Shown: positions 11,176 to 54,279, counted from the first letter of the stretch. The stretch is DNA of 64,000 nt from Pecten maximus (GCF_902652985.1 NC_047020.1:27404001-27468000), one strand, 5' to 3'. Translations and numbers: made by a program. The notes: a model not told the origin generated them from the sequence alone.

Positions 11176-12192
11176 GTTGGGGTCTGTGGGCGAAGCCTTA
11201 GTGGTGTCTGTTGGCGAAGCCTTGGTGGAGTCTGTGGGCGAAGCCTTGGTGGAGTCTGTGGGCGAAGCCTTGGTGGAGTCTGTGGGCGAAGCCTTAGTGA
11301 AGTCTGTTCGCGAAGCCTTAGTGGAGTTTGTGGGCGAAGCCTTAGTGAAGTCTGTTCGCGAAGCCTTAGTGAAGTCTTTTGGCGAAGCCTTTGTGGAGTC
11401 TGTAGGCGAAACCTTGGTGGGGTCTGTGGGCGAAGCCTTAGAGGTGTCTGTTGGCGAAGCCTTGGTGGAGTCTGTGGGCGAAGCCTTAGTGGAGTCTGTG
11501 GGCGAAGCCTTAGTGGAGTCTGTGGGCGAAGCCTTTGTGGAGTCTGTTGGCGAAGCCTTAGTGGAGTCTGTTCGCGAAGCCTTAGTGGAGTCTGTGGGCG
11601 AAGCCTTAGTGGAGTCTGTGGGCGAAGCCTCAGTGGAGTCTGTGGGCGAAGCCTTTGTGGAGTCTGTGGGCGAAGCTTTTGTGGAGTCTGTGGGCGAAGC
11701 CTTTGTGGAGTCTGTGGGCGAAGCCTTAGTGGAGTCTGTGGGTGAAGCCTTAGTGGAGTCTGTGGGCGAAGCCTTAGTGGAGTCTGTGGGCGAAGCCTTT
11801 GTGGAGTCTGTTCGCGAAGCCTTAGTGGAGTCTGTGGGCGAAGCCTTAGTGGAGTCTGTGGGCGAAGCCTTAGTTGAGTCTGTTGGCGAAGCCTTAGTGG
11901 AGTCTGTGGGCGAAGCCTTTGTGGAGTCTGTTGGCGAAGCCTTAGTGGAGTCTGTTGGCGAAGCCTTAGTGGAGTCTGTGGGCGAAGCCTTAGTGGGGTC
12001 TGTGGGCGAAGCCTTTGTGGAGTCTGTTGGCGAAGCCTTAGTGGAGTCTGTGGGCGAAGCCTTAGTGGAGTCTGTGGGCAAAGCCATAGTGGAGTCTGTG
12101 GGTAAAGCCTTAGTGGAGTCTGTTGGCGAAGCCTTAGTGGAGTCTGTGGGCAAAGCCTTAGTGGAGACTGTGGGCGAAGCCTTGGTGGAGTC
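11176..12192. repeat. 24-bp minisatellite (GTGGAGTCTGTGGGCGAAGCCTTA)n, left block
   Basis: About 42 tandem copies; produces the (VESVGEAL)n and (TDSTKASP)n ORFs. Confidence 0.97.
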
Positions 12193-12565
12193 TGTCACGA
12201 TGGCATGTATTTATATATATGTATATGTATGTGTTGTGGCTGTTTTGTTTGTGAATCATGTGCGCGTATTTGTATGGCACGAATGTAAGTATGGATAGAG
12301 CGGAAGTGCACGTGCGGAAGTTTTGGAAGCGTCACTACAGGTAAGGTATGCCGTGAGAAATGGCCGTGTTTTGCTTACCTGTAGTCGGGTGACATTATTA
12401 ACGTGGATACAGGCACGAAATTCAGACTGTGATGAGTAACTAATGTTATAAGATTATATTTACTTCACTAATTCAGTTCTTTTAGTGTCTCGTATTCCGG
12501 GTAAATGTATTTCTAGTATATGTTTGAACGTGCGGTCCAATCTGCGTAGCATTGAATAGACATAG

Positions 12566-12692
12566 TGTAGCGGAACTGGACCGGGTCGATCGTCGGCGAC
12601 CAGGTAGCTCAATTGGTAGAGCATCTGGCTAATGTTCGGAGGTCCCGGGTTCGAACCCCGGTCTGGCCGTGCATTTTCCCACTCCTATTACA
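12566..12692 (+). mobile_element. 127-bp TG..CA mini-LTR containing a tRNA-derived sequence (tRNA-bearing TRIM-type solo LTR)
   Basis: TGTAGCGGA...TCCTATTACA flanked by a perfect CATAG duplication (12561-12565 and 12693-12697), with an internal tRNA cloverleaf. Confidence 0.8.
12598..12669 (+). pseudogene. tRNA-like sequence with anticodon AAT (Ile-like) inside the mini-LTR; Pol III A and B boxes intact
   Basis: Acceptor GACCAGG/TCTGGCC (one mismatch), D stem GCTC/GAGC, anticodon arm TCTGG-CTAATGT-TCGGA, T arm CCGGG-TTCGAAC-CCCGG. Confidence 0.7.
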
Positions 12693-13566
12693 CATAGAAT
12701 GCATGTTTATGTATTGTGTGTATGGTGGTATTTTCATATTTAATTTGGTAAAGTTATATTCCAATCTGTATTATAACATATATGGTACCTATATTGCATT
12801 AGTAGTAAATATGTGTATGAATGTCCATATACCGGTAAACTAGGTCAGTACGGAAGCTTTGATGCGCCATATTTGAACTATTGTCCATAGTGCTAGTAGT
12901 GTTAGCAATACTGTTTTATATAAATACTTAGTAATATGAGTGCATATATTAACAATATATAAAGTGAGGAATTGTCAAGTGTTTTGTTGTGTGTGTTTTG
13001 AAGCTTTCCATGTTGGAGTGAGATCGATCCTTGTACCAATCAGGACACTGCAAACCACTACGGCTTCGGCAACAGGACCGGTTATGGACCAAGATCAGCC
13101 ACAGGAAGTTTGTTGGTAATCACAGGCGGGTCATGGTATCCAAAGGCTTAGGGATCGACACAGCAGACATTCTAGTTGGATTGTCTTTGGTTAACTAGCT
13201 ACAAACCTTGGCTGGTAACCATATATACGTAACCTGCGGGATTAGTATATAGTGAGGAGGATCTTTGTGTCAATCACCCTAGATGAGACGCGCGCGGGAG
13301 AACGCTGTGGTCCGGTTCAGCTTCAATGCATTGATTCTTGTTCGTGAGGAGAACTTATACTGTGAGCTGTGACGTACTGTGACGTGCTGTACTGAACTTT
13401 TATATGTGGAACTTTATGGGTTTGTTAGAGGTTCTGAGAGTGAGCATGATTGTGCTTTGGTGTTTATATGCATTTGTATATAATAAATGTAAATATTTCT
13501 TGTACTAGTTCTAGTGTAATTATTTCATTTTCAAATACCTAAATCTGACGCTTGTCTTACGTTACA

Positions 13567-15183
13567 GAGTATGTGGGCGAAGCCTTAGTGGAGTCTGTGG
13601 GCGAAGCCTTAGTGGAGTCTGTTGGCGAAGCCTTGGTGGAGTCTGTGGGCGAAGCCTTAGTGGAGTCTGTGGGCGAAGCCTTGGTGGAGACTGTGGGCGA
13701 AGCCTTGGTGGAGTCTGTAGGCGAAGCCTTGGTGGAGACTGTGGGCGAAGCCTTGGTGGAGTCTGTGGGCGAAGCCTTGGTGGAGTCTGTAGGCGAAGCC
13801 TTAGTGGAGTCTGTGGGCGAAGCCTTAGTGGAGTCTGTAGGCGAAGCCTTAGTGGAGTCTGTGGGCGAAGCCTTGGTGGAGACTGTGGGCGAAGCCTTAG
13901 TGGAGTCTGTTGGCGAAGCCTTGGTGGAGTCTGTAGGCGAAGCCTTAGTGGAGTCTGTGGGCGAAGCCTTAGTGGAGTCTGTGGGCGAAGCCTTGGTGGA
14001 GACTGTGGGCGAAGCCTTAGTGGAGTCTGTGGGCGAAGCCTTGGTGGAGTCTGTAGGCGAAGCCTTAGTGGAGTCTGTGGGCGAAGCCTTGGTGGAGACT
14101 GTGGGCGAAGCCTTAGTGGAGTCTGTGGGCGAAGCCTTGGTGGAGACTGTGGGCGAAGCCTTGGTGGAGACTGTGGGCGAAGCCTTGGTGGAGTCTGTAG
14201 GCGAAGCCTTGGTGGAGACTGTGGGCGAAGCCTTGGTGGAGTCTGTGGGCGAAGCCTTGGTGGAGTCTGTAGGCGAAGCCTTAGTGGAGTCTGTGGGCGA
14301 AGCCTTAGTGGAGTCTGTAGGCGAAGCCTTAGTGGAGTCTGTGGGCGAAGCCTTGGTGGAGACTGTGGGCGAAGCCTTAGTGGAGTCTGTTGGCGAAGCC
14401 TTGGTGGAGTCTGTGGGCGAAGCCTTGGTGGAGTCTGTGGGCGAAGCCTTAGTGGAGTCTGTGGGCAAAGCCTTAGTGGAGACTGTGGGCGAAGCCTTAG
14501 TGGAGACTGTGGGCGAAGCCTTGGTGGAGTCTGTCACTCTGTAGGCGAAGCCTTAGTGGAGTCTGTGGGCGAAGCCTTAGTGGAGTCTGTAGGCGAAGCC
14601 TTAGTGGAGTCTGTTGGCGAAGCCTTGGTGGAGTCTGTGGGCGAAGCCTTAGTGGAGTCTGTGGGCGAAGCCTTTGTGGAATCTGTAGGCGAAGCCTTAG
14701 TGGAGTCTGTGGGCGAAGCCTTAGTGGAGTCTGTAGGCGAAGCCTTAGTGGAGTCTGTGGGCGAAGCCTTGGTGGAGTCTGTGGGCGAAGCCTTGGTGGA
14801 GACTGTGGGCGAAACCTTAGTGGAGTCTGTGGGCGAAGCCTTAGTGGTGTCTGTTGGCGAAACCTTGGTGGGGTCTGTGGGCGAAGCCTTAGTGGAGTCT
14901 GTGGGCGAAACCTTGGTGGGGTCTGTGGGCGAAGCCTTAGTGGAGTCTGTGGGCGAAGCCTTGGTGGAGTCTGTGGGCGAAGCCTTAGTGGAGTCTGTGG
15001 GCGAAGCCTTGGTGGAGTCTGTGGGCGAAGCCTTGGTGGAGACTGTGGGCGAAACCTTAGTGGAGTCTGTGGGCGAAGCCTTAGTGGAGTCTGTGGGCGA
15101 AGCCTTAGTGGAGTCTGTGGGCGAAACCTTAGTGGAGTCTGTGGGCGAAGCCTTTGTGGAGTCTGTGGGCGAAGCCTCGGTGG
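13567..15183. repeat. 24-bp minisatellite, right block
   Basis: About 67 copies of the same unit, with a register break at 14532-14537. Confidence 0.97.
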
Positions 15184-15400: not shown

Positions 15401-15778
15401 GATACCTTGACAGAGACACAGTGTAACTCAGGATATGTTATTCCACCACCAATCTAATGATTCAACCCACAGAATCGCACATCTAGCTTCCCACCTGCCT
15501 TATCATCGTTATCATCCATTAAGTTTTCAATTCTGCTTAAGACAACTGCGGGAGATGTTTTAAATGTTATGAGGGCGTCAGCCCTGCTCGAGTCCTAAGT
15601 TTAGTTCTTTTCTCCATGTCGTGCCGTACGTTTTTGCTGGTGGGCGTTGGGTGGTAACTAATCTTGTGCGTAGATTCCCAAGTGGACTTTGAAGGGAAAA
15701 TGGACACTGTTATCTCTAAATTCATGGTCCGGACGGGTTTTTAAGTCATACTCGATTAACGCAAATTTGCTTGTAAGC

Positions 15779-17100
15779 TCACTCACACACCCTTCCTTAC
15801 GCCCAAACCCTCACTCACACAACCTTCCTTACGCCCAAACTCTCACACACCCTTCCTTACGCCTAAACCCTCACACACACAACCTTCCTTACGCCCAAAC
15901 ACTCACACACCCTTCCTTACGCCTAAACCCTCACTCACACAACCTTCCTTACGCCCAAACACTCACATACCCTTCCTTACGCACAGACCGTCACTCACAC
16001 ACTCTTCCTTACGCACAGACCGTCACTCACACACCCTTCCTTACGCCCAAACACTCACACACCCTTCCTTACGCACAGACCGTCACACACCCTTCCTTAC
16101 GCCTAAACCCTCACTCACACAACCTTCCTTACGCCCAAACCCTCACACATCCTTCCTTACGCCTAAACCCTCACTCACACAACCTTCCTTACGCCCAAAC
16201 ACTCACATACCCTTCCTTATGCACAGACCGTCACTCACACACCCTTCCTTACGCCCATACCATCACACACCCTCCCTTACGCCCAAACCCTCACACACCC
16301 TTCCTTACGCCAAAACCCTCACTCACACACCCTTCCTTACGCCCACACCCTCACACACCCTTCCTTACGCCCAAACCCTCACTCACACACCCTTCCTTAC
16401 GCCCATACCCTCACACACCCTTCCTTACGCCCAAACCCTCACATACCCTTCCTTACGCCCATACCCTCACACACCCTTCCTTACGCACATACCCTCACAC
16501 ACCCTTCCTGACGCCCAAACCCTCACTCACATACCCTTCCTTGCGCCCAAACCCTCACTCACACACCCTTCCTTACGCCCAAACCCTCACACACCCTTCC
16601 TTACGCCCAAACCCTCACATACCCTTCCTTACGCCCAAACCCTCACACACACACCCTTCCTTACGCCCAAACCCTCACTCACATACCCTTCCTTACGCCA
16701 AACACTCACGCACCCTTCCTTACGCACATACCCTCACACACCCTTCCTTACGCAAAAATCCTCACTCACATACCCTTCCTTACGCACAGACCGTCACTCA
16801 CACACTCTTCCTTACGCACAGACCGTCACTCACACACCCTTCCTTACGCACATACCCTCACACACCCTTCCTTACGCCCAAACCCTCACTCACATACCCT
16901 TCCTTACGCCCAATCACTCACACACCCTTCCTTACGCACAGACCGTCACTCACACACCCTTCCTTACGCCCAAACCCTCACACACCCTTCCTTACGCCCA
17001 AACACTCACGCACCCTTCCTTACGCACATACCCTCACACACCCTTCCTTACGCAAAAATCCTCACTCACATACCCTTTCATACGCATAGACCCTCATTTA
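15779..17100. repeat. C/A-rich minisatellite with roughly 28-32 bp variable units (CACACACCCTTCCTTACGCCCAAACCCT)
   Basis: Tandem copies with CA/CACT slippage variants. Confidence 0.95.
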
Positions 17101-19539: not shown

Positions 19540-20760
19540 TCCTTCCTATAAATTTTTGGGAATGAAGTGGCGTTGGACCATCCAGCTGTCGTAAGAATTG
19601 TGTCCATCGACGAGCCGCACTAGCTGCAGCAGTCCTAGATAAATCGGCTGAGAATTTTTTTAATGTATTCATTCTAGCTCAAAATGTTTAATCCATCTAC
19701 TGACCGTATCCCTGCTAACGACCTTGTGCGGTTTCATCGTACTCATAAAAAGTCTTGACCCTACCCGTATATCAGCTTATACGTATGCTTCTAATGTTTC
19801 ATAATACAAAGAGCAGGATCTGAACAAGCTGGCAAAGATAAACCATGTAAATGTCGACCAGGTTTACTGGTTTTTAACAAAGAAAAGTATCTAATAACTA
19901 CTTTAGACCTACGATACTTATATCATCTAAATCTTATAAATGTAAAGATTGTTCTCTTCGACTACTAAGTAATACTAATAAGGTAACTATTTTCCAAGTT
20001 AGCTGCTTCAAAGTTAAACCTTCAAATGCATACAACGTTTTCATAAATTTTAATACTACAGACACATCCCATGTTTCATAGGTCTTTGGGAGTACAGGTA
20101 TTTTTTACAAGCACGTCCTTTACATACCGTTGCACTAATAAATTGTCTCCTATCTTACGAGTTTTTCCTGTTAGTCCACATAGTGAGGAACTAGATGGAC
20201 GGGCTGTGTTTAAAGCAATATAACCAAGATGCCTATCAAAACAGTGATAGACATCTTGGTTATGGTGCCATAAACACAGCCCGTTCAGCATTTGATCCAT
20301 CTTTCAATGTAGCACTTCATTGAAAGGTGGATCAAATGAATCACTCTACTACAGCTCACAAAATAGCCCCCAACCGCTGCTCACAAAATAGCCACCAATA
20401 TTAATATAAGTCCATATACTGTCTTTTTGTGGACTGATGTCAAGATGCTTCGATGATCTAGATAGCGTCCTGCGATATTCCTCTGTTTTCAAGCAGTATA
20501 CCGATAAACGGAAACAGCTAAGACTCAACTTTCTCAGTGGATAATGTCGACTTGGTTGTGTTAGCATGACAGAAGTCTGGCGATGTTGTGGTAAAGAACT
20601 TTCAGTTTCAAGCTACAAGTGTGCTTGGGGAATCGAAATATGTCTACTTCTTGACTCTACAGTGTCATCCAACACTGCAGCTCAAGCAAAGTATCATTTG
20701 ACATCATAAACCTTTCGTCATAATCACCAACATTACATTTTAACACACTATGATGGTATC
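19540..20760 (-). mobile_element. Decayed DIRS-type tyrosine-recombinase retrotransposon fragment
   Basis: Peptides LGYIALNTARPSSSSL..IGDNLLVQRYVKDV (compare GLGYSALNTARSALS..G.HPLV.RFMKG) and MDTILTTAGWSNATSF..FYR (YR box II region); many stops and frameshifts. Confidence 0.72.
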
Positions 20761-24149: not shown

Positions 24150-26556
24150 AATACATGCAACCATATTATGTCTAGGTATGATAAAACGACAATTTGGTGT
24201 TGAACATTTTTTAAAGGTTCGAAACAAGGCAAACATTCATCCCGATTTTAATTTCCAATTGATATAAATGATTTAGAAGATTTAACTAATCATTAAAGGT
24301 TTTGTCCTTTGTTTTCCAGGTATTGGTACAGAACATATCTTACATATCTAAATGATTATAAGTATCATAACATATATCTACGCGAGTATAAAGATAACAA
24401 CATACATATATCTACGAGATTATATAGATAATAACAAATATCTACGCGTGTATATAGATTATAACACATTTCTATCCGTGTATATAGATTATAACATATA
24501 TATACCCGTGTATATAGATTATAATATATTTCTACCCGTGTATATAGATTATAACATATATCTAACCGTGTATATATATTATAACATATATCTACCCGTG
24601 TATATAGATTATAATACATTTCTACCCGTGTATATAGATTATAATATATATCTACGTGAGTATATAGATTATAACATATATCTACCCGTGTATATAGATT
24701 ATAATATATATCTACCCGTGTATATAGATTATAACATATATCTACCCGTGTATATAGATTATAACATATATCTACCCGTGAATATAGATTATAATACATT
24801 TCTACCCGTGTATATAGATTATAACATATATCTACCCGTGTATATAGATTATAACATATATCTACCCGTGTATATAGATTATAATATGTATCTACCCGTG
24901 TATATAGATTATAACATATATCTACCCGTGTATATAGATTATAATATATATCTACCCGTGTATATAGATTATAACATATATCTACCCGTGTATATAGATT
25001 ATAACATATATCTACCCGTGTATATAGATTATAACATATATACCGTGTATATAGATTATAATATATATCTACCCGTGTATATAGATTATAATATATATCT
25101 ACCCGTGTATATAGATTATAATATATTTCTACCCGTGTATATAGATTATAACATATCTAACCGTGTATATAGATTATAATATATAGCTATCCGTGTATAT
25201 AGATTATAACATATATCCATCCGTGTATATAGATTATAACATATATCTACGCTAGTATGTAAATTATAATATATATCTACCCGTGTATATAGATTATAAC
25301 ATATATCTACGCGTGTATATAGATTATCACATATATCTACCCGTGTATATAGATTATAATATATTTCTACCCGTGTATATGGATTATAATATATATCTAC
25401 CCGTGTATATAGATTATAATAGATTTCTACCCATGTATATAGATTATAATATATATCTACCTGTGTATATAGATTATAATATATATCTACCCGTGTATAT
25501 AGATTATAATAGATTTCTACCCATGTATATAGATTATAATATATATCTACCTGTGTATATAGATTATAACATATATCTACCCGTGTATATAGATTATAAT
25601 ATATTTCTACCCGTGTATATAGATTATAACATATCTAACCGTGTATATAGATTATAATATATAGCTATCCGTGTATATAGATTATAACATATATTCATCC
25701 GTGTATATAGATTATAACATATATCTACGCTAGTATGTAAATTATAATATATATCTACCCGTGTATATAGATTATAACATATATCTACGCGTGTATATAG
25801 ATTATAACATATATTTACCCGTGTATATAGATTATAATATATTTCTACCCGTGTATATATATTATAATATATATCTACCCGTGTATATAGATTATAATAG
25901 ATTTCTACCCGTGTATATAGATTATTATATATATCTACCTGTGTATATAGATTATAACATATATCTACCCGTGTATATATATTATAACATACAGTATATC
26001 TACCCGTGTATATAGATAATAACATATATCTTCCCGTGTATATAGATTATAACATATATCTACCCGTGTATATAGATTATAACATATATCTACCCGTGTA
26101 TATAGATTATAATATGTATCTACCCGTGTATATAGATTATAACATATATCTACCCGTGAATATAGATTATAATATATATCTACCCGTGTATATAGATTAT
26201 AACATTTATCTACCCGTGTATATAGATTATAATATGTATCTACCCGTGTATATAGATTATAACATATATCTACCCGTGTATATAGATTATAATATATATC
26301 TACCCGTGTATATAGATTATAATATATATCTACCCGTGTATATAGACTATAATATAGATCTACCCGTGTATATAGATTATAATATATATCTACCCGTGTA
26401 TATAGATTATAACATATATCTACCCGTGAATATAGATTATAATATATATCTACCCGTGTATATAGATTATAATATATATCTACCCGTGTATATAGATTAT
26501 AATATATATCTACCCGTGTATATAGATTATAATATATATCTACCCGTGTATATAGA

Positions 26557-27332
26557 GAATAATACATACCTTTTTCCATGGAAAAAGGTATGTTTTATTC
26601 AATTTATTGTATTCTTGGTAATAAATCACAGAACATTAATCAAAACAACAATTATAACTTGACAAGAAAAATCAGATTCAAATTTTTAATGTATTGAATT
26701 ATAAACACTTTATAATATTGAAGTTTTTTAAGTCTTTATGAAGTTCATATCTGTCAAATTTATAATGATTTCTAAATAAGTTCCTTTCCAAAGGTGTTTC
26801 TACCATGTCACTGATCAAGGATCAAGAATAAACATTGATTTGAATCAGTCAGAATCACTGTCAATTATCATCCTTGCTCTTTTCCTGCCCCTACATGTAC
26901 TTGCTACATGTACCCCGAGACCCCAATACAACAATTGGTTAACATCGGCTTGTACGACCTCTCCTATTGTAAAGTTTAAGTTATCAATATCCTCGGTTAC
27001 CATGTGTTCCATCTCGGCGAGATATTCTAGCTCTGCAATTCGTGCTGCAAGCGAATTTAAAATCTTCTCTCCCATGTCCTCATTCCTTCGTCTACTCGAC
27101 GCCATGTTGTTTGTTTTGGTTTCGCTGACAACACAGCACCTACGTCAAAACCCGAGAGACCCGAATAGTTTGATGAGACGCAAAATTTAGAGGTGTTCCG
27201 CGAAGAGGGCCAATACAGGGTTTGGGGTGCATTACTGAATCAATAATGCATGGGTAAGGATTACGGATCGGGAGATTTAGCGCCATAATGCATATGCAAA
27301 AAAACCTGTGTTTATTACTAAGTATACAATAA
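26557..27332 (-). mobile_element. 776-bp unclassified insertion flanked by ATAGA direct repeats (Crypton-like or Helitron-like non-autonomous element)
   Basis: The satellite unit is split at ATAGA (26552-26556 and 27333-27337). Perfect 30-bp palindrome at 26564-26593. No TIR, LTR or polyA tail. Confidence 0.7.
26845..27105 (-). CDS. Intronless 86-aa protein of unknown function carried by the insertion
   Basis: Strong start context AACAACATGGCG, non-repetitive and GC-richer than its flanks, amphipathic LNSLAARIAELEYLAEM, C-terminal RGRKRAR plus DSDSD, and two downstream AATAAA signals at about 26595-26610 on the minus strand. Confidence 0.5.
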   Translation of the reverse strand: MASSRRRNEDMGEKILNSLAARIAELEYLAEMEHMVTEDIDNLNFTIGEVVQADVNQLLYWGLGVHVASTCRGRKRARMIIDSDSD

Positions 27333-30004
27333 ATAGATTATAACATATATCTACCCGTGTATATAGATTATAATAGATTTCTACCCGTGTATATAGATTA
27401 TAATATATATCTACCTGTGTATATAGATTATAACATATATCTACCCGTGTATATAGATTATAACATATTTCTACCGGTGTATATAGATTATAACATATCT
27501 AACCGTGTATATAGATTATAATATATAGCTATCCGTGTATATAGATTATAACATATATTCATCCGTGTATATAGATTATAACATATATCTACCCGTGTAT
27601 ATAGATTATAACATATATCTACCCGTGTATATAGATTATAATATATATCTACCCGTGTATATAGATTATAATATATATCTACCCGTGTATATAGATTATA
27701 ATATATATCTACCCGTGTATATAGATTATAATATGTATCTACCCGTGTATATAGATTATAACATATATCTACCCGTGTATATAGATTATAATATATATCT
27801 ACCCGTGTATATAGATTATAATACATTTCTACCCGTGTATATAGATTATAACATATATCTACCCGTGTATATAGATTATAATATATATCTACCCGTGTAT
27901 ATAGATTATAACATATATCTACCCGTGTATATATATTATAACATATCTAACCGTGTATATAGATTATAATATATATCTACCCGTGTATATAGATTATAAC
28001 ATATATCTACCCGTGTATATAGATTATAATATATATATAACCGTGGATATAGATTATAATATATTTCTACCCGTGTATATAGATTATAACATATATCTAC
28101 CCGTGTATATAGATTATAACATATATCTACCCGTGTATATAGATTATAATATATATATAACCGTGGATATAGATTATAATATATTTCTACCCGTGTATAT
28201 AGATTATAACATATATCTAACCGTGTATATAGATTATAACATATATCTACCCGTGTATATAGATTATAACATATATACCGTGTATATAGATTATAACATA
28301 TATCTACCCGTGTATATAGATTATAACATATATCTACCCGTGTATATAGATTATAACATATATCTACCCGTGTATATAGATTATAATATATATCTACCTG
28401 TGTATATAGATTATAACATATATCTATCCGTGTATATAGATTATAACATATATCTACCCGTGTATATAGATTATAATATATATCTACCCGTGTATATAGA
28501 TTATAACATATATCTATCCGTGTATATAGATTATAACATATATCTACGCTAGTATGTAAATTATAATATATATCTACCCGTGTATATAGATTATAATATA
28601 TATCTACCTGTGTATATAGATTATAATATATATCTACCCGTGTATATAGATTATAACAAATATCTACCCGTGTTTATAGATTATAATATATTTCTACCCG
28701 TGTATATAGATTATAATATATATCTACCCTTGTATATATATTATAACATACAGTATATCTACCCGTGTATATAGATAATAACATATATCTTCCCGTGTAT
28801 ATAGATTATTACATATATCTACCCGTGTATATAGATTATAATATGTATCTACCCGTGTATATAGATTATAACATATATCTACCCGTGAATATAGATTATA
28901 ATATATATCTACCCGTGTATATAGATTATAATATGTATCTACCCGTGTATATAGATTATAACATATATCTACCCGTGTATATAGATTATAACATATATCT
29001 ACCCGTGTATATAGATTATAATATATATCTACCCGTGTATATAGATTATAACATATATCTACCCGTGTATATAGATTATAACATATATCTACCCGTGTAT
29101 ATAGATTATAATATATATCTACCCGTGTATATAGATTATAACATATTTCTACCCGTGTATATAGATTATAACATATATCTACCTGTGTATATTGATTATA
29201 ATATATATCTACCCGTGTATATAGATTATAATATATTTCTACGCGTGTATAAATATCTAATCACAGACTAAACACGTGAGTTTTAATCCATTCTTGAATT
29301 TGGTTTTCGACTACCTGGTAGCAGATAGTTAGCAGTTCCACAAAATGGTTTCCACCTTTCCGAAGCACATTTAACAACAAGTCATAGTACGAGAGTTTGG
29401 AATACAACACAGGGATTCTTTTTTCGGTCGTAGTGATCATGACGGCTGGTAGAAGGTGACACATCCCTGTAAATACTGAGCAACTATTCCATTTATTGCA
29501 TAACAATTCATAGCGAACATATCTGACGGTAAATCAGCAGGGAGAAGAGAAAATATATCCAGAAAAAAACCGTGATCTTCCTGTATCGACATAAATTTGA
29601 TCGTGGAAGACATCTAAAAGAAAAGCGACGAAAAGAGGGCCCCTGTAGAATTAATGTATCACTAACATTTCTCCTATTTAAGGGACGCTGAATGAAACAG
29701 TATTTAACATTAATTTGAAACAATGCCAAGATCTTTAATCTCCCATTTCTATCCTTCCTACCCCTCCGTTCTGTACTATGTGTTCTTATTTTAGCGCCCC
29801 TAGAAACAAGTCCTCCATATGACCCTAACTGCTACAAAGACACACTAAGGCATCGCAAACGACACAAATCTCCTCGCTTGCCAACAGCAACTCGTTCCAG
29901 GTAGCTCGTACCTGACTAATAAACAGGAATTATACGTCATTGTATGCCTCGATTGTCCCACTTTGTAAGGTTAAAGTCAAAATTAACAAAAAATTAAAAT
30001 TTAA

Positions 30005-45010: not shown

Positions 45011-46189
45011 AATAATAATTAATTAAATAAGTATTTATATAATAATCCGAATTTTTATGTTAATGACCGTAGCGACCAAACAACAACTGTTCTGAATACA
45101 TATTGACAAAATTAGATGATCTGACCACACGGGGACATTGTACGATGTTTACTTGCCGAAATATACGCATTTTAATTCCAATCCAAACCGCCTCACAGCT
45201 TCGGGTCGCCATCTTTGCTCATATCAAAACATCTGTGCGTTTGAAAGAGTCAGTACTGCAAAGCTTCTAAATGATCTTGTGTTACAAATTTTAGGATTAT
45301 AATAGAAACGAAATATGGATTTTAAAATAATTTGATTTAAATTACTTATGCATTAGGTTAGCGAATCGTAGCAATTATTTACAATGCACTCTAACGTTGT
45401 AATATTCAAAGTGGGTAGTTCCATTTGTGCACAGGTGTGTTAACAAAACATAGTGATTAGGAATACTACTGTGTCCAGCAGGGTGCTGTTTTGGACCCTT
45501 CGTTTTTGTTACAATTTTATATTGACAACACATGGATTGTATCATTTATTTTTGATGCATGGTTTACACATATTCAAGTAACTATGTGATCAATTGTTCA
45601 CATGTTATGTCGCTAAATCTAGACCAGTATAAATACAAATGATGCAGCTGATGATGAGGTTTGTTACATTATTAACAACTAACAGATATACATGTACATG
45701 TATATATATAAAGCACCTATTTCCCCTAAATGACTATAGACTTGTCTGTAATCAATATGCTAATCAAAGTTCAACACAACAGGTAATTCTGGTCGGACTA
45801 TAGTAATACTGTAAAAGTACATATTTTAGCGGTAATATGATTTTAGTGCTTTTCGCGCCTTCCGTTCAATTATGTATCTGTAATTAAATGATATATATTG
45901 GATTATATGACAAGTATTATAAGTGCACCAAATCATCATTTTGCTAATATGTTTAAAAACGGTCGATTACGCCAAGAATAAATACATGGATACTGGTTCA
46001 TAAAACACCATTGTTTATATGTAGCTGAATGTAGATTTTACTGATACTTTACTTATTTTATGGTGTACTGTAGAGTGTCGTGTAGTAAACGCACTGTACA
46101 TTGATTTAATGTCACGAGTACTTAATATTGTCTTTTTACCGTTATGTCTGTGTCTCTCATTATGATCTTAAAGGCGTGAAAAAGAACAA

Positions 46190-48710
46190 ACAAGGGAAGA
46201 GAGCACCTTTAAATAGCAGTCTATTAAGAACCAATAAGGTAAGAGAGTGACATTACATTAAATAGCAATCTAGTAAGGACAAATAAGGGAGGAGAACACC
46301 TTTCAATAGCAGTCTAGTAAGGACAAATAAGGGAGGAGAGCACCTTTCAATAGCAGTCTAGTAAGGACAAATAAGGGAAGACAGCGCATTTAAATAGCAA
46401 TCTAGTAAGGACAAATAAGGGAAGACAGCGCATTTAAATAGCAATCTAGTAAGGACAAATAAGGGAGGAGAGCACCTTTCAATAGCAATCTAGTAAGGAC
46501 AAATAAGGGAAGAGAGAGCATTAAATAGCAACCTATTAAGGACAAATAAGGGAGGAGAGCAACTTTCAATAGCAATCTAGAAAGGACAAATAAGGGAGGA
46601 GAGCGCCTCTAAATAACAATCTAGAAAAGACAAATAAGGGAAGAGAGAGCATTAAATAGCAATATATTAAGGACAAATAAGGGAGGAGAGCACCTTTCAA
46701 TAGCAGTCTAGTAAGGACAAATAAGGGAAGAGAGAGCATTAAATAGCAGTCTAGTAAGGACAAATAAGGGAAGAGAGCGCATTTAAATAGCAATCTATTA
46801 AGGACAAATAAGGGAGGAGAGCGCATTTAAATAGCAATCTAGTAAGGACAAATAAGGGAAGAGAGCGCATTTAAATAGCAATCTAGTAAGGACAAATAAG
46901 GGAGGAGAGCGCATTTAAATAACAATCTAGTAAGGACAAATAAGGGAGGAGAGCGCATTTAAATAGCAATCTAGTAAGGACAAATAAGGGAGGAGAGAGC
47001 ATTAAATAGCAATCTAGTAAGGACAAATAAGGGAAGAGAGAGCATTTAAATAGCAATCTAGTAAGGACAAATAAGGGAGGAGAGCACCTCTAAATAACAA
47101 TCTATTAAGGACAAATAAGGGAGGAGAGCACCTCTAAATAACAATCTATTAAGGACAAATAAGGGAAGAGAGAGCATTAAATAGCAATCTAGTAAGGACA
47201 AATAAGGGAGGAGAGCGCCTCTAAATAACAATCTAGTAAGGACAAATAAGGGAGGAGAGCGCCTCTAAATAACAATCTAGAAAGGACAAATAAGGGAAGA
47301 GAGAGCATTAAATAGCAATCTATTAAGGACAAATAAGGGAGGAGAGCGCATTTAAATAGCAATCTAGTAAGGACAAATAAGGGAGGAGAGCGCCTCTAAA
47401 TAACAATCTAGAAAGGACAAATAAGGGAAGAGAGAGCATTAAATAGCAATCTATTAAGGACAAATAAGGGAGGAGAGCACCTTTCAATAGCAGTCTAGTA
47501 AGGACAAATAAGGGAGGAGAGCACCTTTCAATAGCAGTCTAGTAAGGACAAATAAGGGAAGAGAGCGCATTTAAATAGCAATCTAGTAAGGACAAATAAG
47601 GGAGGAGGGCAACTTTCAATAGCAGTCTAGTAAGGACAAATAAGGGAGGAGGGCACCTTTCAATAGCAGTCTAGTAAGGACAAATAAGGGAGGAGGGCAA
47701 CTTTCAATAGCAGTCTAGTAAGGACAAATAAGGGAGGAGAGCACCTTTACATTAAGCAAATATACTTCTTGCAAGGATAAGTAAGAGAGGAGAGCGCCTC
47801 TAAATAGCAATCTAGTAAGGACAAATAATGAAAATGAGAGCATTTAAATAGATATCTAGTCAGGACAAATAATGGAACAGAGAGCATTTAAAATGCAATT
47901 TGGTAAGGATAAATAAGGGAGGAGAGCGCCTTTAAATAGCATCTAGTAAGGATAAACAAGGGAACATAGCGCATTTATAAAGCAACCTAGTAAGGACAAA
48001 TAACGGAAGGAGCTCCTTTATATAGCAACCTAGTAAGGATAAATAACGGAAGGGGCTCCTTTATATAGCAACCTAGTAAGGATAAATAACGGAAGGAGCT
48101 CCTTTATATAGCAACCTAGTCAGGATAAATAACAGAAGGAGCTCCTTTATATAGCAACCTAGTAAGGATAAATAACAGGAGCTCCTTTATATAGCAACTT
48201 AGTAAGGATAAATAACAGAAGGGGCTCCTTTATATAGCAACCTAGTAAGGATAAATAACAGAAGGAGCTCCTTTATATAGCAACCTAGTAAGGATAAATA
48301 ACAGAAGGGGCTCCTTTATATAGCAACCTAGTAAGGACAAATAACGGAAGGGGCTCCTTTATATAGCAACCTAGTAAGGATAAATAAGAGAAGGAGCTCC
48401 TTTATATAGCAACCTAGTAAGGATAAATAACAGAAGGAGCTCCTTTATATAGCAACCTAGTAAGGATAAATAACAGAAGGGGCTCCTTTAAATAGCAACC
48501 TAGTAAGGACAAATAACGGAAGGGGCTCCTTTATATAGCAAACTAGTAAGGATAAATAACAGAAGGGGCTCCTTTATATAGCAACCTAGTGAGGATAAAT
48601 AACGGAAGGAGCTCCTTTATATAGCAACCTAGTAAGGATAAATAACGGAAGGAGCTCCTTTATATAGCAACCTAGTGAGGATAAATAACAGAAGGGGCTC
48701 CTTTAAATAA
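46190..48710. repeat. 44-bp satellite grading into a related 43-bp variant
   Basis: TAGTAAGGACAAATAAGGGAGGAGAGCACCTTTCAATAGCAGTC up to about 47750; TAGTAAGGATAAATAACGGAAGGGGCTCCTTTATATAGCAACC from about 47990. Confidence 0.96.
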
Positions 48711-49379: not shown

Positions 49380-50490
49380 CTATAGTTAATCCAAACACTG
49401 ATTTATATTTCACTATAACCTAGTTAGTCCAAATACTGATTTATGTTTCACTATAACCTAGTTAGTCCAAACACTGATTTATGTTTCACTATAACCTAGT
49501 TTGTCCAAACACTGATTTATATTTCAATATAACCTAGTTAGTCCAAACACTGATTTGTGTTTCACTATAACCTAGTTAGTCCAAACACTGATTTATGTTT
49601 CAATATAACCTAGTTAGTCCAAACACTGATTTATATTTCACTGTAACCTAGTTAGTCCAAATACTGATTTATATTTCACTGTAACCTAGTTAGTCCAAAC
49701 ACTGATTTATGTTTCACTATAACCTAGTTAGTCCAAACACTGATTTATATTTCAATATAACCTAGTTAGTCCAAACACTGATTTATGTTTCACTACAACC
49801 TAGTTAGTCCAAATACTGATTTATGTTTCACTATAACCTAGTTTGTCCAAACACTGATTTATGTTTCACTATAACCTAGTTTGTCCAAACACTGATTTAT
49901 ATTTCAATATAACCTAGTTAGTCCAAACACTGATTTATGTTTCACTATAACCTAGTTTGTCCAAACACTGATTTATGTTTCACTATAACCTAGTTAGTCC
50001 AAACACTGATTTATGTTTCAATATAGCCTAGTTAGTCCAAACACTGATTTATGTTTCACTATAACCTAGTTTGTCCAAACACTGATTTATATTTCAATAT
50101 AACCTAGTTAGTCCAAACACTGATTTATATTTCACTGTAACCTAGTTAGTCCAAATACTGATTTATGTTTCACTATAACCTAGTTAGTCCAAACACTGAT
50201 TTATGTTTCAATATAACCTAGTTAGTCCAAACACTGATTTATGTTTCACTATAACCTAGTTTGTCCAAACACTGATTTTTTTTCATTATAACCTAGTTCT
50301 GATTTGTTTCCCTATAACCTATATATAGCTATAGTTAGCCTGAATAATGATTTGTTTCACTCAAACCTAGTTAATCTGAACACAGATTTGTGTTTCCCTT
50401 TAACCTAGTTAATCTGAACACAGATTTGTGTTTCACTATAACCTAGTTAATCTGAACAGATTTGTGTCTCACTATAACCTAGTTAGCCTT
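49380..50490. repeat. 38-bp minisatellite
   Basis: (ATAACCTAGTTAGTCCAAACACTGATTTATGTTTCACT)n. Confidence 0.96.
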
Positions 50491-51375: not shown

Positions 51376-52414
51376 AAATCTACTGGTCAAATGTGAGGAT
51401 GATGAATATGAGTGACTAATACTGAGCACCATATTTTTTTAACATTTACACTGCTAATTTCTACATGTATATACACAATATAACCATATGTAACAAATAT
51501 AAATTAGCAAAAGGAGAAGGCAGCCACAGACAACCAGAGCTCTTAACAGTAAAAAATATATGTAATGGATTCAGTACATAAGGATCCAACCAACCAAATA
51601 CAATATACCATAGGTAAACAGGGCATCATGGTATTTCCAATGAAAGTTCTAGAGTGCGAAGAGATATTGTAAAGAGTATGATGTTTCCATTTAAAAAGAA
51701 CAGCAAGGAGTGAAAAAAAAATTTGTATACACCACATGTATTAAATATGCCTGTATGGCATGAAATATTTGTGTGTACTTCCTTTCGTGGTTTGGAGCTT
51801 TCAAATTTTTTCATAGGTACAAACTTTCATTGGTAGTACATGCAACAATAATGCATACAGAAATATCTGTTATTCTTATATTTGTGGTTCCAAAGCAACC
51901 ACCAAAACAATAAAAGTTTATACATAACAAACATTCCATGTTATACTGTATGCATATTTATAATGACTTAACCATGAAATCTTCAAATATTTCAATAGAA
52001 AGCTTAAGGTAAATGAATCAAAAACCTAACATCCAAACAAAATGTACAAAAATGTAATTAACACAAAACAGGTGGTTCTCTACATCAACAACTATATTGT
52101 ATCATTGTATTGCACTATAATGGCATCTTTTCATGGTGATGTGATACCAAAAGGATGGACAAGATGTATTTCCATTGATCACCATTGGCAACTGGTCAGT
52201 TTCATATCACAAACTACAAAGTATTATCAGATTTAGGAATGCCTACTGGTATGAAGTAATGTGTAACAAAAACTATCCATAGGTTTGGTATTTTTTGCTT
52301 GTCAATGTTGTCACAGTACATCAAATGTCATAACATTATGACGTCAGACAGCAAGCACAAGTAAGTTCAGCAAATTTGAAATTCTAATTAAAAGTGTCTA
52401 AAATCATATTAATC

Positions 52415-53650
52415 CAAAGTTTACGTGTTGGGCCCATCCCCTACATTATGTCAAAGTTTATTTGTTAGGCCCATCCCCTGCATTGTGTCAGAATTTATGT
52501 GTTGGGCCCATCCCTTATATTGTGCCAAAGTTTATGTGTTGGGCCCATCCCCTGCATTGTGTCAGAATTTATGTGTTGGGCCCATCCCCTACATTGTGCC
52601 AAAGTTTATGTGTAGGGGCCATCCCCTGCATTGTGTCAGAATTTATGTGTTGGGCCATCCCTTACATTGTACCAAAGTTTATGTGTTGGGCCCATCCCCT
52701 ACATTGTGCCAAAGTTTATGTGTTGGGCCCATCCTCTGCATTGTGTCAGAATTTATGTGTAGGGGCCATCCCCTACATTGTGCCAAAGGTTATGTGTTGG
52801 GCCCATCCCCTACATTGTACCAAAGGTTATGTGTTGGGCCCATCCCCTACATTGTGTCAGAGTTTATGTGTTGGACCCATCCCTTACATTGTACCAAAGT
52901 TTATGTGTTGGGCCATCCCTTACATTGTGCCAAAGTTTATGTGTAGGGGCCATCCCTTACATTGTGTCAGAGTTTATGTGTTGGACCCATCCCTTACATT
53001 GTACCAAAGTTTATGTGTTGGACCCATCCCTTACATTGTACCAAAGTTTATGTGTTGGGCCCATCCCCTACATTGTGTCAAAGTTTATGTGTTGGGCCCA
53101 TCCCCTACATTGTGCCAAAGGTTATGTGTTGGGCCATCCCTTACATTGTACCAAAGTTTATGTGTTGGGCCCATCCCTTACATTGTGTCAGAGTTTATGT
53201 GTAGGGGCCATCCCTTATATTGTGTCAGAGTTTATGTGTAGGGCCCATCCCCTACATTGTGCCAAAGTTTATGTGTTGGACCCATCCCTTACATTGTACC
53301 AAAGTTTATGTGTTGGGCCCATCCCTTACATTGTGTCAGAGTTTATGTGTAGGGCCCATCCCCTACATTGTGCCAAAGTTTATGTGTTGGACCCATCCCT
53401 TACATTGTACCAAAGTTTATGTGTTGGGCCCATCCCCTACATTGTGCCAAAGTTTATGTGTTGGGCCATCCCTTACATTGTGCCAAAGTTTATGTGTTGG
53501 GCCCATCACTTACATTGTGCCAAAGTTTATGTGTTGGGCCTATCCCTTACATTGTGTCAGAGTTTATGTGTTGGGCCCATCCCCTACATTGTGTCAAAGT
53601 TTATGTGTTGGGCCCATCACTTACATTGTGTCAAAGTTTATGTGTAGGTC
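52415..53650. repeat. 37-bp minisatellite
   Basis: (AAGTTTATGTGTTGGGCCCATCCCCTACATTGTGCCA)n. Confidence 0.96.
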
Positions 53651-54279
53651 CCCTGGGCTTGTTACAGGATAAATATATAGTGGCATTACATTTTCAGGCA
53701 CTTGAAAAAAAAAATATTAAAAATCCTTTAAAATCTAAGAGTCTACAAATAAACATCTTGTTTTTAAAAGTAAAAACACTAAATCTCACACTTTCTCAAA
53801 TCACTTATTTTTCTGGCAACATATAAACACATAAATAATTAAATATCCACTGTTCCTTTTCTTAGAGGAAATGTAATGTGATATGTTCACAAACATATGA
53901 CTCCATTAACAAATATGAAGCAGTCCTTGATCTCTAAACTCTGAAGGTTTTGCCTGCTTTGTATTGCACATATATTGTCCAACAAGTTACTTGGTACTGG
54001 GATAAACTGACGAAACATGAGATCTGTTCTTCAAATCCAGATCAAATTGCACGGAAAAAAGTAAGTCAAATAGTTTATATACATCTAGTATATTTTCAAA
54101 AATATTAAAAAATTAAAAAATAAAACTTTACATGTAGATTAAAAATGATCAATATTACCGGTTTGATGATTATTTTGCCAATTTTCAGATGTTTCTAAAA
54201 CGAATATCAATTCAAAAACTATGCCTATACTCCCAGTAACTATGCTGTTTGGCCAAAGCAATGCTTACTAATACCATAT

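What the first reader, a model, noticed from the sequence alone, without database searches (positions are those of the whole stretch)
26552..27337. Orphan mini-gene cassette inserted in a satellite: 86-aa ORF, perfect 30-bp terminal palindrome, 5-bp direct repeats, no transposase
Seen: 776 bp of unique DNA splits a satellite unit exactly at ATAGA, which is duplicated. On the minus strand it reads as a complete expression unit. An upstream region of about 230 bp holds a hairpin (TGCATTA-N9-TAATGCA, about 27228-27250) and a TGACGT motif. AACAACATGGCG then starts an intact 86-aa ORF with a helical acidic core, NLS-like RGRKRAR and a DSDSD tail. Two AATAAA signals follow, and then the palindrome ACATACCTTTTTCCATGGAAAAAGGTATGT 7 bp from the end. 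Known: tyrosine-recombinase Cryptons have short terminal direct repeats and no TIRs; Helitrons start with TC and end with a hairpin, and the minus strand here can be read as starting A|TCTATTTATTGTATAC. Inference: a non-autonomous mobile element that keeps a small nuclear cargo protein, possibly viral-like or an anti-silencing factor. This is the best candidate for an undescribed system in the window.
Basis: partly seen in the sequence, partly recalled or inferred. Interest (0 to 1): 0.8.

Follow-up and report, generated by a model that had tools for sequence, protein, structure and literature searches.

The report
Deleted Crypton transposon copy in a satellite
The "orphan mini-gene cassette" is a short, internally deleted copy of a 2.8-kb tyrosine-recombinase (Crypton-type) jumping gene of a scallop-like genome, and its 86-aa reading frame is only the fused first and last pieces of the recombinase gene, so it is an ordinary defective transposon.

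Summary
In detail: 781 bp (window 26552-27332, sense strand minus) interrupt one unit of a 30-bp satellite, carry an intact 86-aa ORF and end in a perfect 30-bp palindrome. The genome holds about 55-60 copies with identical ends. Two are full length (2.8 kb) and encode one three-exon tyrosine recombinase of the CryptonA/DUF3504 kind; all others are internal-deletion derivatives with different breakpoints. The 86-aa ORF is recombinase residues 1-57, 10 filler residues and the last 19 residues. It exists only in the window copy and one sister copy, and those two differ by two non-synonymous changes. ATAGA is not a target duplication: the left copy is the element's own conserved 3' end in every copy, and there is no TSD. 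The 30-bp palindrome is the collapsed stump of a roughly 140-nt terminal hairpin. Targets share TA-N6-T^ATA, and 15 of 32 insertions lie in minisatellites. One RNA run holds a spliced contig of the full-length gene. Helitron, DIRS and cargo-gene readings are rejected. It is a new member of a known kind. The junction-spanning hairpin architecture, shared with three other families, is the interesting residue, and other reports of this scan have already noted it.

The parts
26552..27332 (-). Whole element: non-autonomous, internally deleted Crypton copy (781 bp). Sense strand is the window's minus strand.
   Evidence: The ends are defined by 32 aligned copies. Excision restores the 30-bp satellite unit.
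27311..27332 (-). 5' terminal sequence TTATTGTATACTTAGTAATAAA, the outer arm of the junction-spanning inverted repeat
   Evidence: It is conserved in 58 genomic sites with at most 2 mismatches. It is the inverted repeat of 26604-26626 (I1).
27106..27310 (-). 5' untranslated / presumed promoter region, with the hairpin at 27228-27250 and TGACGT at 27142-27147
   Evidence: The region is identical in the sister copy L002. Its function was not tested.
26930..27105 (-). Start of the recombinase gene (residues 1-57 and part of codon 58), retained 5' of the deletion
   Evidence: It is identical apart from 2 residues to the N-terminus of the 233-aa exon-1 ORF of the full-length C11 copy. It matches reference positions 4-411 of the full-length element.
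26906..26929 (-). 24-nt filler at the deletion junction. It encodes most of the 10 non-recombinase residues LLYWGLGVHV and contains a 15-nt copy (ATTGGGGTCTCGGGG) of the hairpin arm.
   Evidence: Compare the hairpin sequences.
26845..26905 (-). Last 19 codons of the recombinase (ASTCRGRKRARMIIDSDSD) plus its own stop codon
   Evidence: It is 100% identical to residues 179-197 of the C-terminal recombinase piece L031:957-1550(-).
26627..26844 (-). 3' untranslated region of the recombinase gene
   Evidence: It is collinear with the full-length copies.
26604..26626 (-). 3' subterminal inverted copy of the 5' end (21 of 23 nt). It also holds one of the two AATAAA motifs.
   Evidence: I1. The same arrangement is seen in families L050 and L052.
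26557..26600 (-). Collapsed terminal palindrome: a perfect 30-bp core at 26564-26593 with imperfect outer arms. It is the stump of a roughly 140-nt hairpin present in other copies.
   Evidence: The sister copy L002 has 99 extra nucleotides exactly at the palindrome centre.
26552..26556 (-). Element's own 3' terminal pentamer (sense TCTAT, plus-strand ATAGA). It was mistaken for half of a TSD.
   Evidence: It is present before a variable flank in 31 of 32 copies; one copy has TCTAG.
27333..27337 (.). Satellite's own ATAGA: 5 nt of microhomology between the target and the element's end
   Evidence: It is part of the satellite consensus unit. Other insertions share only 1-3 nt.
24367..29251 (.). 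Host 30-bp satellite array (about 163 units), the target of the insertion

Best explanation
The insert is a non-autonomous, internal-deletion derivative of a 2.8-kb CryptonA-type DNA transposon.

The autonomous form carries one three-exon gene for a tyrosine recombinase of about 550 aa. The protein has a QRICH1-like N-domain and a DUF3504/phage-integrase catalytic domain.

Inferred mechanism, following the Goodwin/Kojima model for Cryptons: the recombinase excises the element as a circle. It then recombines the joined ends (...TTCTCTAT^TTATTG...) with a chromosomal pseudo-site of the form TA-N6-T^ATA. No target duplication results, only 1-5 nt of microhomology.

In the window, the satellite unit offered TTATAATCTAT^ATAC. 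This mimics the element's own end TTATTCTCTAT^, which explains the apparent ATAGA 'repeat'.

A deletion removed reference positions 412-2381 and left 24 nt of templated filler. By chance it joined recombinase codons 1-57 in frame to the last 19 codons, giving the 86-aa ORF. This derivative was then mobilised in trans at least once, because a sister copy sits on C19.

After or during insertion, the roughly 140-nt terminal hairpin of the window copy lost its centre symmetrically, leaving a perfect 30-bp palindrome.

Shown: the copies, ends, breakpoints, gene identity, splicing and target consensus. Inferred: the circular intermediate, trans-mobilisation by the recombinase, and the role of the hairpin.
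For: - **Copy number and ends.** There are 73 DNA matches, and 58 5' ends and 53 3' ends, all with identical termini.
- **Deletion series.** All short copies map to a 2817-nt reference (C9, L032:556-3372) as a 5' part plus a 3' part. There are at least 15 different breakpoint pairs, and several are shared by 2-4 loci.
- **Full-length copies.** The C9 and C11 copies are collinear. C11 is split by a nested LTR retrotransposon.
- **Protein identity.** The gene pieces hit PF25561 QRICH1 (32.8 bits, cutoff 30.8) and PF00589. They align at 32-46% identity with an intact 541-aa recombinase of the same genome. That protein and two further intact ones (541, 561 and 579 aa) hit DUF3504 at 1e-20 to 1e-30. 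The 541-aa one also hits QRICH1 chain 9hjt and the Tn1549 Int catalytic region in PDB.
- **Origin of the ORF.** The window ORF's first 57 and last 19 residues and its stop codon are those of the recombinase.
- **No conservation of the ORF.** It exists only in the window and L002; the other derivatives give different ORFs. Window and L002 differ at 5 of 781 nt. The two differences inside the ORF are both non-synonymous.
- **Target.** T at -1 in 32/32, T at +2 in 32/32, A at +3 in 29/32, A at -8 in 28/32 (p = 2e-9), T at -9 in 27/32. There is no TSD.
- **RNA.** An RNA-Seq contig (X20) removes two GT..AG introns exactly where the protein alignment breaks. Those joints are absent from the DNA run.
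- **Literature.** Animal Cryptons and their non-autonomous derivatives are described in PMC3212892.
Against: - No intact autonomous copy of this family was found in the assembly. Both full-length copies carry TGA at the first catalytic Arg codon plus frameshifts. The source of recombinase for the recent copies is therefore not identified. An RNA contig from another sample has CGA at that codon, which hints at an intact allele elsewhere.
- No circle junction or head-to-tail dimer is present in the assembly.
- The end anatomy (5' end repeated inverted next to a 3' hairpin, insertion after T, no TSD) also looks like Helentron ends (PMC4067079).
- Placement within the CryptonA clade rests on Pfam/PDB similarity, not on a tree with reference Cryptons.
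Confidence: 0.9

Rival explanations
1. A non-autonomous Helitron/Helentron (rolling-circle element), with the palindrome as its 3' stem-loop.
For: There is no TSD. A hairpin lies close to the 3' end. The 5' terminal 22 nt are repeated inverted just upstream of the hairpin, like Helentron subTIRs plus a 3' stem-loop. The 5' flank always ends in T (Helentron anatomy from PMC4067079). The window copy alone can be read as A|TC...
Against: Full-length copies with the same termini are only 2.8 kb and encode a tyrosine recombinase and nothing else; there is no Rep, helicase or endonuclease. The ends are TTATTG... ...CTCTAT, not TC...CTRR. The 3' flank begins with A in 22 of 32 copies and with T in only 6, so the site is not T^T or A^T. 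Three other families with the same architecture also encode only a recombinase.
Confidence: 0.03
2. The 86-aa ORF is a functional small nuclear protein. It could be cargo, or a truncated-recombinase regulator of transposition in the manner of P-element KP repressors.
For: The ORF is intact. It keeps the native start context, the N-terminal segment and the basic/acidic C-terminal tail of the recombinase. The 5' part of the family is present in RNA-run contigs.
Against: The ORF is present in only 2 of about 55 copies, and both come from one deletion event. Other derivatives terminate in unrelated frames. The two differences within the ORF between the two copies are both non-synonymous. Ten residues come from filler DNA. 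The window-type junction was not among the joints listed in the RNA runs.
Confidence: 0.05
3. A remnant of a DIRS/Ngaro-type tyrosine-recombinase retrotransposon.
For: It encodes a tyrosine recombinase. It also carries an internal inverse complement of its joined ends, which recalls the DIRS internal complementary region.
Against: There is no reverse transcriptase, RNase H or methyltransferase in the 2.8-kb full-length unit. The only RT found belongs to a separate nested LTR element with its own 626-bp LTRs. Both full-length genomic copies retain the two introns that the mRNA removes, so copies are made from DNA. Kojima and Jurka report that DUF3504 matches Crypton recombinases but not DIRS/Ngaro ones (PMC3212892).
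Confidence: 0.02

Closest known systems
Non-autonomous animal Cryptons (CryptonI-1N1_RPro of Rhodnius, CryptonA-1N1/1N2_OL of medaka; Kojima & Jurka 2011, PMC3212892)
   Same: These are internal-deletion derivatives that keep a few hundred bp of both ends of a recombinase-only autonomous element. They have no TSD and no classical TIRs, outnumber the autonomous copies, and have a DUF3504-like recombinase.
   Different: This is a new family in a bivalve. The recombinase gene has two introns. The ends carry a roughly 140-nt palindrome plus an inverted copy of the 5' terminus, whereas that paper reports no terminal repeats for animal Cryptons. A target consensus could be derived here.
Helentron-associated interspersed elements (HINE/DINE-1; PMC4067079)
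   Same: Short non-autonomous elements. The 5' terminal sequence is repeated inverted near the 3' end and followed by a 3' stem-loop. They insert next to T, make no TSD, and are often associated with tandem repeats.
   Different: Their autonomous partner encodes Rep/helicase(-endonuclease); here it encodes a tyrosine recombinase. The hairpin here is roughly an order of magnitude longer, and the target is not T^T.
Fungal Cryptons (CryptonF) with 4-6-bp terminal direct repeats (Goodwin model, as summarised in PMC3212892 and PMC13465315)
   Same: Short direct repeats at the ends reflect homology between the element's recombination site and the target, not duplication. The window's ATAGA and the GATAA of family L050 are of that kind.
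   Different: In this family most insertions share only 1-3 nt. The protein domain structure differs (no GCR1_C domain).
Folded-DNA recombination sites of bacterial tyrosine recombinases (integron attC, CTX-phage attP); from my own knowledge, not tested here
   Same: A long imperfect hairpin with a small bulge at or near the crossover point, and recombination with a weakly conserved duplex partner without long homology.
   Different: There is no evidence here that the hairpin is used in folded form. Both strands fold equally well in silico.

Membership tests
Crypton (CryptonA, DUF3504-type tyrosine-recombinase DNA transposon) | The autonomous copy encodes a tyrosine recombinase with the R..HxxR..H..Y catalytic residues | tested here: met
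   The exon pieces align with intact relatives and with Tn1549 Int. NHSVRKT (HxxR), GHKS and NNY are present. The first Arg codon is TGA in both assembly copies and CGA in an RNA contig. The family therefore has the motif, but the assembled copies are dead.
Crypton (CryptonA, DUF3504-type tyrosine-recombinase DNA transposon) | Similarity of the recombinase to DUF3504 / QRICH1-type domains rather than to DIRS/Ngaro recombinases | tested here: met
   The N-terminal piece hits PF25561 at 32.8 bits (cutoff 30.8). Relatives at 32-46% identity hit PF12012 at 1e-20 to 1e-30, and one of them hits PDB QRICH1 9hjt at 3.9e-12. The family's own DUF3504 region is split by introns and a stop, so it was not scored as one piece.
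Crypton (CryptonA, DUF3504-type tyrosine-recombinase DNA transposon) | No reverse transcriptase or second transposase; DNA-level transposition | tested here: met
   The 2.8-kb unit holds only the recombinase gene. Genomic copies keep the introns that the mRNA removes.
Crypton (CryptonA, DUF3504-type tyrosine-recombinase DNA transposon) | No TSD and no long terminal repeats; at most short microhomology with the target | tested here: met
   32 insertions, several inside tandem arrays that reconstruct the empty site, show 0 bp gained or lost and 1-5 nt of shared sequence.
Crypton (CryptonA, DUF3504-type tyrosine-recombinase DNA transposon) | Extrachromosomal circular intermediate | not testable with these tools
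   There is no head-to-tail junction in the assembly. Raw reads were not available, only contigs.
Crypton (CryptonA, DUF3504-type tyrosine-recombinase DNA transposon) | Phylogenetic placement among reference CryptonA recombinases | not tested
   No Repbase references were at hand, and the large protein search was not spent on this.
Helitron / Helentron | The autonomous partner encodes Rep/helicase | tested here: not met
   Full-length copies encode only a tyrosine recombinase.
Helitron / Helentron | 5' TC ... 3' CTRR with A^T insertion (Helitron), or T^T insertion (Helentron) | tested here: not met
   The ends are TTATTG ... CTCTAT. The flanks are T^A in 22 of 32 copies and T^T in 6 of 32.
Helitron / Helentron | Subterminal inverted repeat plus a 3' stem-loop | tested here: met
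   This is a resemblance of form only.
DIRS/Ngaro tyrosine-recombinase retrotransposons | RT/RNase H gene and terminal repeats with an internal complementary region | tested here: not met
   The unit has no RT. The RT found belongs to a nested LTR element.
TIR (DDE) transposon / MITE | Terminal inverted repeats at both extreme ends and a fixed-length TSD | tested here: not met
   The inverted copy of the 5' end is subterminal, up to about 170 nt from the 3' end in copies with the full hairpin. There is no TSD.
Host or cargo protein-coding gene (86-aa ORF) | ORF conserved across copies with signs of purifying selection | tested here: not met
   The ORF is present in 2 copies of one deletion lineage. 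The differences are 2 non-synonymous and 0 synonymous.

The most novel reading that the evidence does not exclude
The recombination site of these animal Cryptons exists only after the ends are joined. It would be a roughly 200-nt interrupted hairpin or cruciform, made of the outer 13-22-nt inverted repeat, a small asymmetric bulge that holds the crossover, and the 130-170-nt palindrome. The recombinase would read it in folded form, as in integron attC or CTX-phage attP. It would recombine this site with TA-N6-T^ATA pseudo-sites, which are concentrated in AT-rich minisatellites. Under this reading the window copy, with its hairpin apex lost, would be immobile.
Probability: 0.2. Interest if true: 0.6.

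Novelty: new member of a known kind. Interest (0 to 1): 0.3.

Why it matters
For this finding, the result removes a false lead. There is no orphan gene and no new kind of system. There is only a dead deletion copy of a Crypton, whose ORF, 'NLS', 'TSD' and perfect palindrome all have mundane origins.

The family is still a useful specimen. Crypton transposition has never been reconstituted, and animal Cryptons are described as lacking recognisable ends. Here the ends, a target consensus, exact empty sites (from insertions in tandem arrays), a deletion series, a spliced transcript and a conserved junction-spanning hairpin are all defined. Together these give concrete substrates for a transposition assay.

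Tried and rejected
- **Helitron/Helentron reading.** I considered it first because of the end anatomy. I dropped it once the long copies turned out to encode a tyrosine recombinase.
- **The 11.5-kb C11 copy as an autonomous element with extra genes.** The extra 8.7 kb is a nested LTR retrotransposon with gag, RT, RNase H, integrase and 626-bp LTRs. I only described it.
- **Head-to-tail junction.** None was found in the assembly.
- **Genome-wide baseline for tandem-repeat content.** The minisatellite preference therefore stays semi-quantitative. It is 15 of 32, against 30% in this one window (p = 0.035). By my own rough normal-approximation estimate (no tool run) it is about p = 0.01 against 27% total annotated repeats (PMC7191990).
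- **Strand asymmetry of the hairpin.** The six full hairpins folded on both strands differ by 3 kcal/mol or less, so this is inconclusive.
- **Rfam on the element.** Nothing came near the gathering scores.
- **Literature on a Crypton-minisatellite link or Crypton palindromes.** Searches found nothing relevant.
- **Steps not run.** The large protein searches, structure prediction and complex prediction were not used, because Pfam and PDB similarity had already settled the protein's identity.
- **Spliced model.** The three exons were never joined into a spliced model for any search. They were handled separately by reference.
Full report
**What is in the window**

A 30-bp satellite (array 24367-29251, about 163 units) is interrupted by unique DNA. 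On the minus strand the insert contains:
- an intact 86-aa ORF at 26845-27105;
- a small hairpin at 27228-27250;
- a TGACGT motif and two AATAAA motifs;
- a perfect 30-bp palindrome at 26564-26593.

ATAGA occurs at both borders. Removing 781 bp restores a consensus satellite unit exactly.

**It is a multi-copy element with defined ends**

A search of the window's own genome gave 73 matches at 97-100% identity. G000 has 918,306,378 bases in 3983 contigs. These figures, and the 60.1-Mb longest scaffold, equal those published for the king scallop Pecten maximus (PMC7191990). The species name is an inference from those numbers only.

Pattern searches count 58 5' ends and 53 3' ends. Aligning the ends of 32 copies gave these results:
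- The sense strand is the window's minus strand.
- Every copy starts with TTATTGTATACTTAGTAATAAA.
- Every copy ends with ...GGTATGTATTATTCTCTAT, one of them with ...TCTAG.

The 'left' ATAGA (26552-26556) is thus the element's own 3' pentamer. It precedes unrelated flanks in all copies, and the other flank varies. There is no target-site duplication.

Where a copy lies in a tandem array, the neighbouring units reconstruct the empty site. They show that no base was gained or lost (window, L010, L012, L013, L016, L022, L026). The window's second ATAGA belongs to the satellite, so here 5 nt of the target happen to equal the element's end.

**The parent element and its gene**

Two copies are long. 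C9 (L032:559-3369) is 2.81 kb. C11 is the same element split by an 8.7-kb nested LTR retrotransposon with 626-bp LTRs (gag/PNMA, RT, RNase H and integrase). I only describe that retrotransposon.

The element carries a single gene on its sense strand:
- The first piece (233-aa ORF in C11) begins MASSRRRNEDMGEKILNS... and hits the QRICH1 domain PF25561 above threshold.
- The last piece (197 aa) hits Phage_integrase and ends ...ASTCRGRKRARMIIDSDSD.
- tblastn with an intact 541-aa relative from the same genome aligns three blocks, separated by 242 and 338 nt.
- An RNA-Seq contig (run X20) joins exactly those blocks. It removes L032 1486-1726 (GT..AG) and an intron ending at 2266. Neither joint is present in the DNA run (splice sites read).

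The motifs FGM[R]SRKEH, NHSVRKT, GHKS and NNY correspond to the R, HxxR, H and Y of tyrosine recombinases.

Three intact relatives in the genome (541, 579 and 561 aa) hit DUF3504, Phage_integrase and QRICH1 in Pfam. The 541-aa one also hits the QRICH1 structure 9hjt in PDB. Kojima and Jurka showed that DUF3504 is the recombinase of animal Cryptons (CryptonA), and that such Cryptons have non-autonomous derivatives (PMC3212892).

The unit has no RT, and both genomic full-length copies retain the introns. This excludes a DIRS-like retroelement.

**What the 86-aa ORF is**

Mapped on the 2817-nt reference, every short copy is a 5' part plus a 3' part. The pairs of breakpoints vary widely: the 5' part ends between positions 195 and 741, and the 3' part starts between 2028 and 2620. 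Some pairs are shared by 2-4 loci. This is a classical deletion series with secondary amplification.

The window copy keeps reference positions 4-411 and 2382-2709, joined by 24 nt of filler. The filler contains a 15-nt copy of the hairpin arm. The ORF is therefore:
- recombinase residues 1-57;
- 10 junction/filler residues (LLYWGLGVHV);
- the last 19 recombinase residues with the native stop.

Only the window and its sister copy on C19 (L002, same breakpoints and filler) have this ORF. Every other derivative runs into a different frame or lacks the start.

Window and L002 differ at 5 of 781 positions. The two differences in the ORF are both non-synonymous, K32M and E40D in the window. The 'NLS' and the acidic tail are the normal C-terminus of these recombinases. 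Nothing indicates a selected cargo protein.

**What the palindrome is**

In other copies the two arms of the window's palindrome are separated. The full structure is a roughly 140-nt near-perfect hairpin. It folds at -72 to -81 kcal/mol with z about -16 to -20.

Its centre is unstable. Copies show different symmetric or asymmetric losses, and some show corrected or flipped apices. The window copy lacks 99 nt exactly at the centre relative to L002, which is why its remnant is a perfect palindrome.

Directly internal to the hairpin lies an inverted copy of the 5' terminal 22 nt (26604-26626 versus 27311-27332). If the ends are joined, the outer repeat, a small bulge (ATAGA against AAT) and the hairpin form one long interrupted inverted repeat. 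The crossover point lies at the bulge.

**Targets**

Across 32 insertions the flanks show T at -9 (27), A at -8 (28, p = 2e-9), T at -1 (32), A at +1 (22), T at +2 (32) and A at +3 (29). The consensus is TA-N6-T^ATA.

The window's site, TTATAATCTAT^ATAC, departs from this at -9/-8. Instead it mimics the element's own end, TTATTCTCTAT^.

Fifteen of 32 insertions lie inside minisatellite arrays of unrelated sequence with periods of 13-93 bp. I could not obtain a genome-wide baseline. Against the 30% tandem-repeat content of this one window, p = 0.035. Total annotated repeats in the published assembly are 27%. I take the preference as suggestive only.

**Activity**

Both assembled full-length copies are dead:
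- They share TGA at the first catalytic Arg codon.
- C9 has a 4-nt insertion in exon 1 and a stop in exon 3.
- C11 has frameshifts and the nested retrotransposon in intron 2.

The spliced RNA contig from another sample has CGA at the Arg codon (place 1788). A less damaged allele may therefore exist in the population.

RNA runs also contain contigs with deletion-derivative joints: 774>2603, 788>2958 and 1068>2972. Two of these correspond to breakpoint pairs seen as DNA in the assembly. The window-type joint was not among those listed. Contigs cannot give expression levels, and DNA carry-over cannot be excluded except for the spliced contig.

**Beyond the finding**

Three other recombinase-only families of the same genome have 35-45% amino-acid identity to this one. 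All carry a 130-180-nt palindrome 0-7 nt from one terminus.

In L050 and L052 the first 13 nt of the 5' end are repeated inverted right next to the palindrome, and all three 5' ends begin with TTAT. L050 sits in a 41-bp satellite with GATAA at both ends, and L051 sits in a widely dispersed satellite.

The papers I could read state that animal Cryptons have no terminal repeats or lack a description of them (PMC3212892, PMC13465315). Earlier notes of this scan on other windows of the same genome describe the same hairpin ends and the internal complement of the joined ends. These are AI notes, not independent evidence. I reached the architecture from this family's copies before reading them.

**Verdict**

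The finding is a real, well-delimited feature, but an ordinary one: a defective non-autonomous CryptonA copy. Its ORF, its 'direct repeats' and its perfect palindrome are by-products of a deletion, of microhomology at a recombinase pseudo-site, and of hairpin collapse.

Noticed in passing
L050:1453-4187, L051:1973 onward, L052:1829-4360 (loci from C7, C16, C13): Three other Crypton families with intact 541-579-aa recombinases share the end architecture: a 130-180-nt palindrome 0-7 nt from a terminus. In L050 and L052 there is also an inverted copy of the TTAT... 5' end next to the palindrome. L050 and L051 also sit inside satellites; L050 has GATAA at both ends.
   Followed up: partly
L032:1788 (C9 copy) and the same codon in the C11 copy: The first catalytic Arg codon is TGA in both assembled full-length copies and in DNA run X11, but CGA in a spliced RNA contig of run X20. 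An intact allele may segregate in the population.
   Followed up: partly
L031:1848 to L037:1211 (C11:20607347-20616210): A Gypsy-type LTR retrotransposon (gag/PNMA, RT, RNase H, integrase; 626-bp LTRs 99.8% identical) is nested in intron 2 of the full-length Crypton copy.
   Followed up: partly
hairpin apices in L002, L009, L016, L028 and others: In most copies the hairpin apex reads, on the strand antisense to the gene, GGGCC-GAA(G)-GGCCC with a tandem AA/GA mismatch just below it. Some copies have the mismatch corrected or the apex rearranged. The two strands fold equally well in silico.
   Followed up: partly
window 1-64000: About 30% of the window is minisatellite arrays of unrelated units with periods of 18-60 bp. 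Examples are 11178-12195, 13567-15177, 15778-17096, 46182-48709, 49383-50486, 52414-53652, 58426-60092 and 60482-63277.
   Followed up: no
window 12196-13566: A 1.37-kb stretch of non-repeat DNA separates two arrays of the same 24-bp unit. It is possibly another insertion into an array. It has no recombinase similarity.
   Followed up: no
window 20196-20287: An isolated inverted repeat with 43-nt arms (86% complementary) and a 6-nt spacer, of unknown nature.
   Followed up: no
L049 (C18:26064601-26067723), L036/L045 (C1:38.53 Mb): These copies have rearranged or partly duplicated 3' hairpin regions: extra inverted pieces of reference positions 2581-2814.
   Followed up: no
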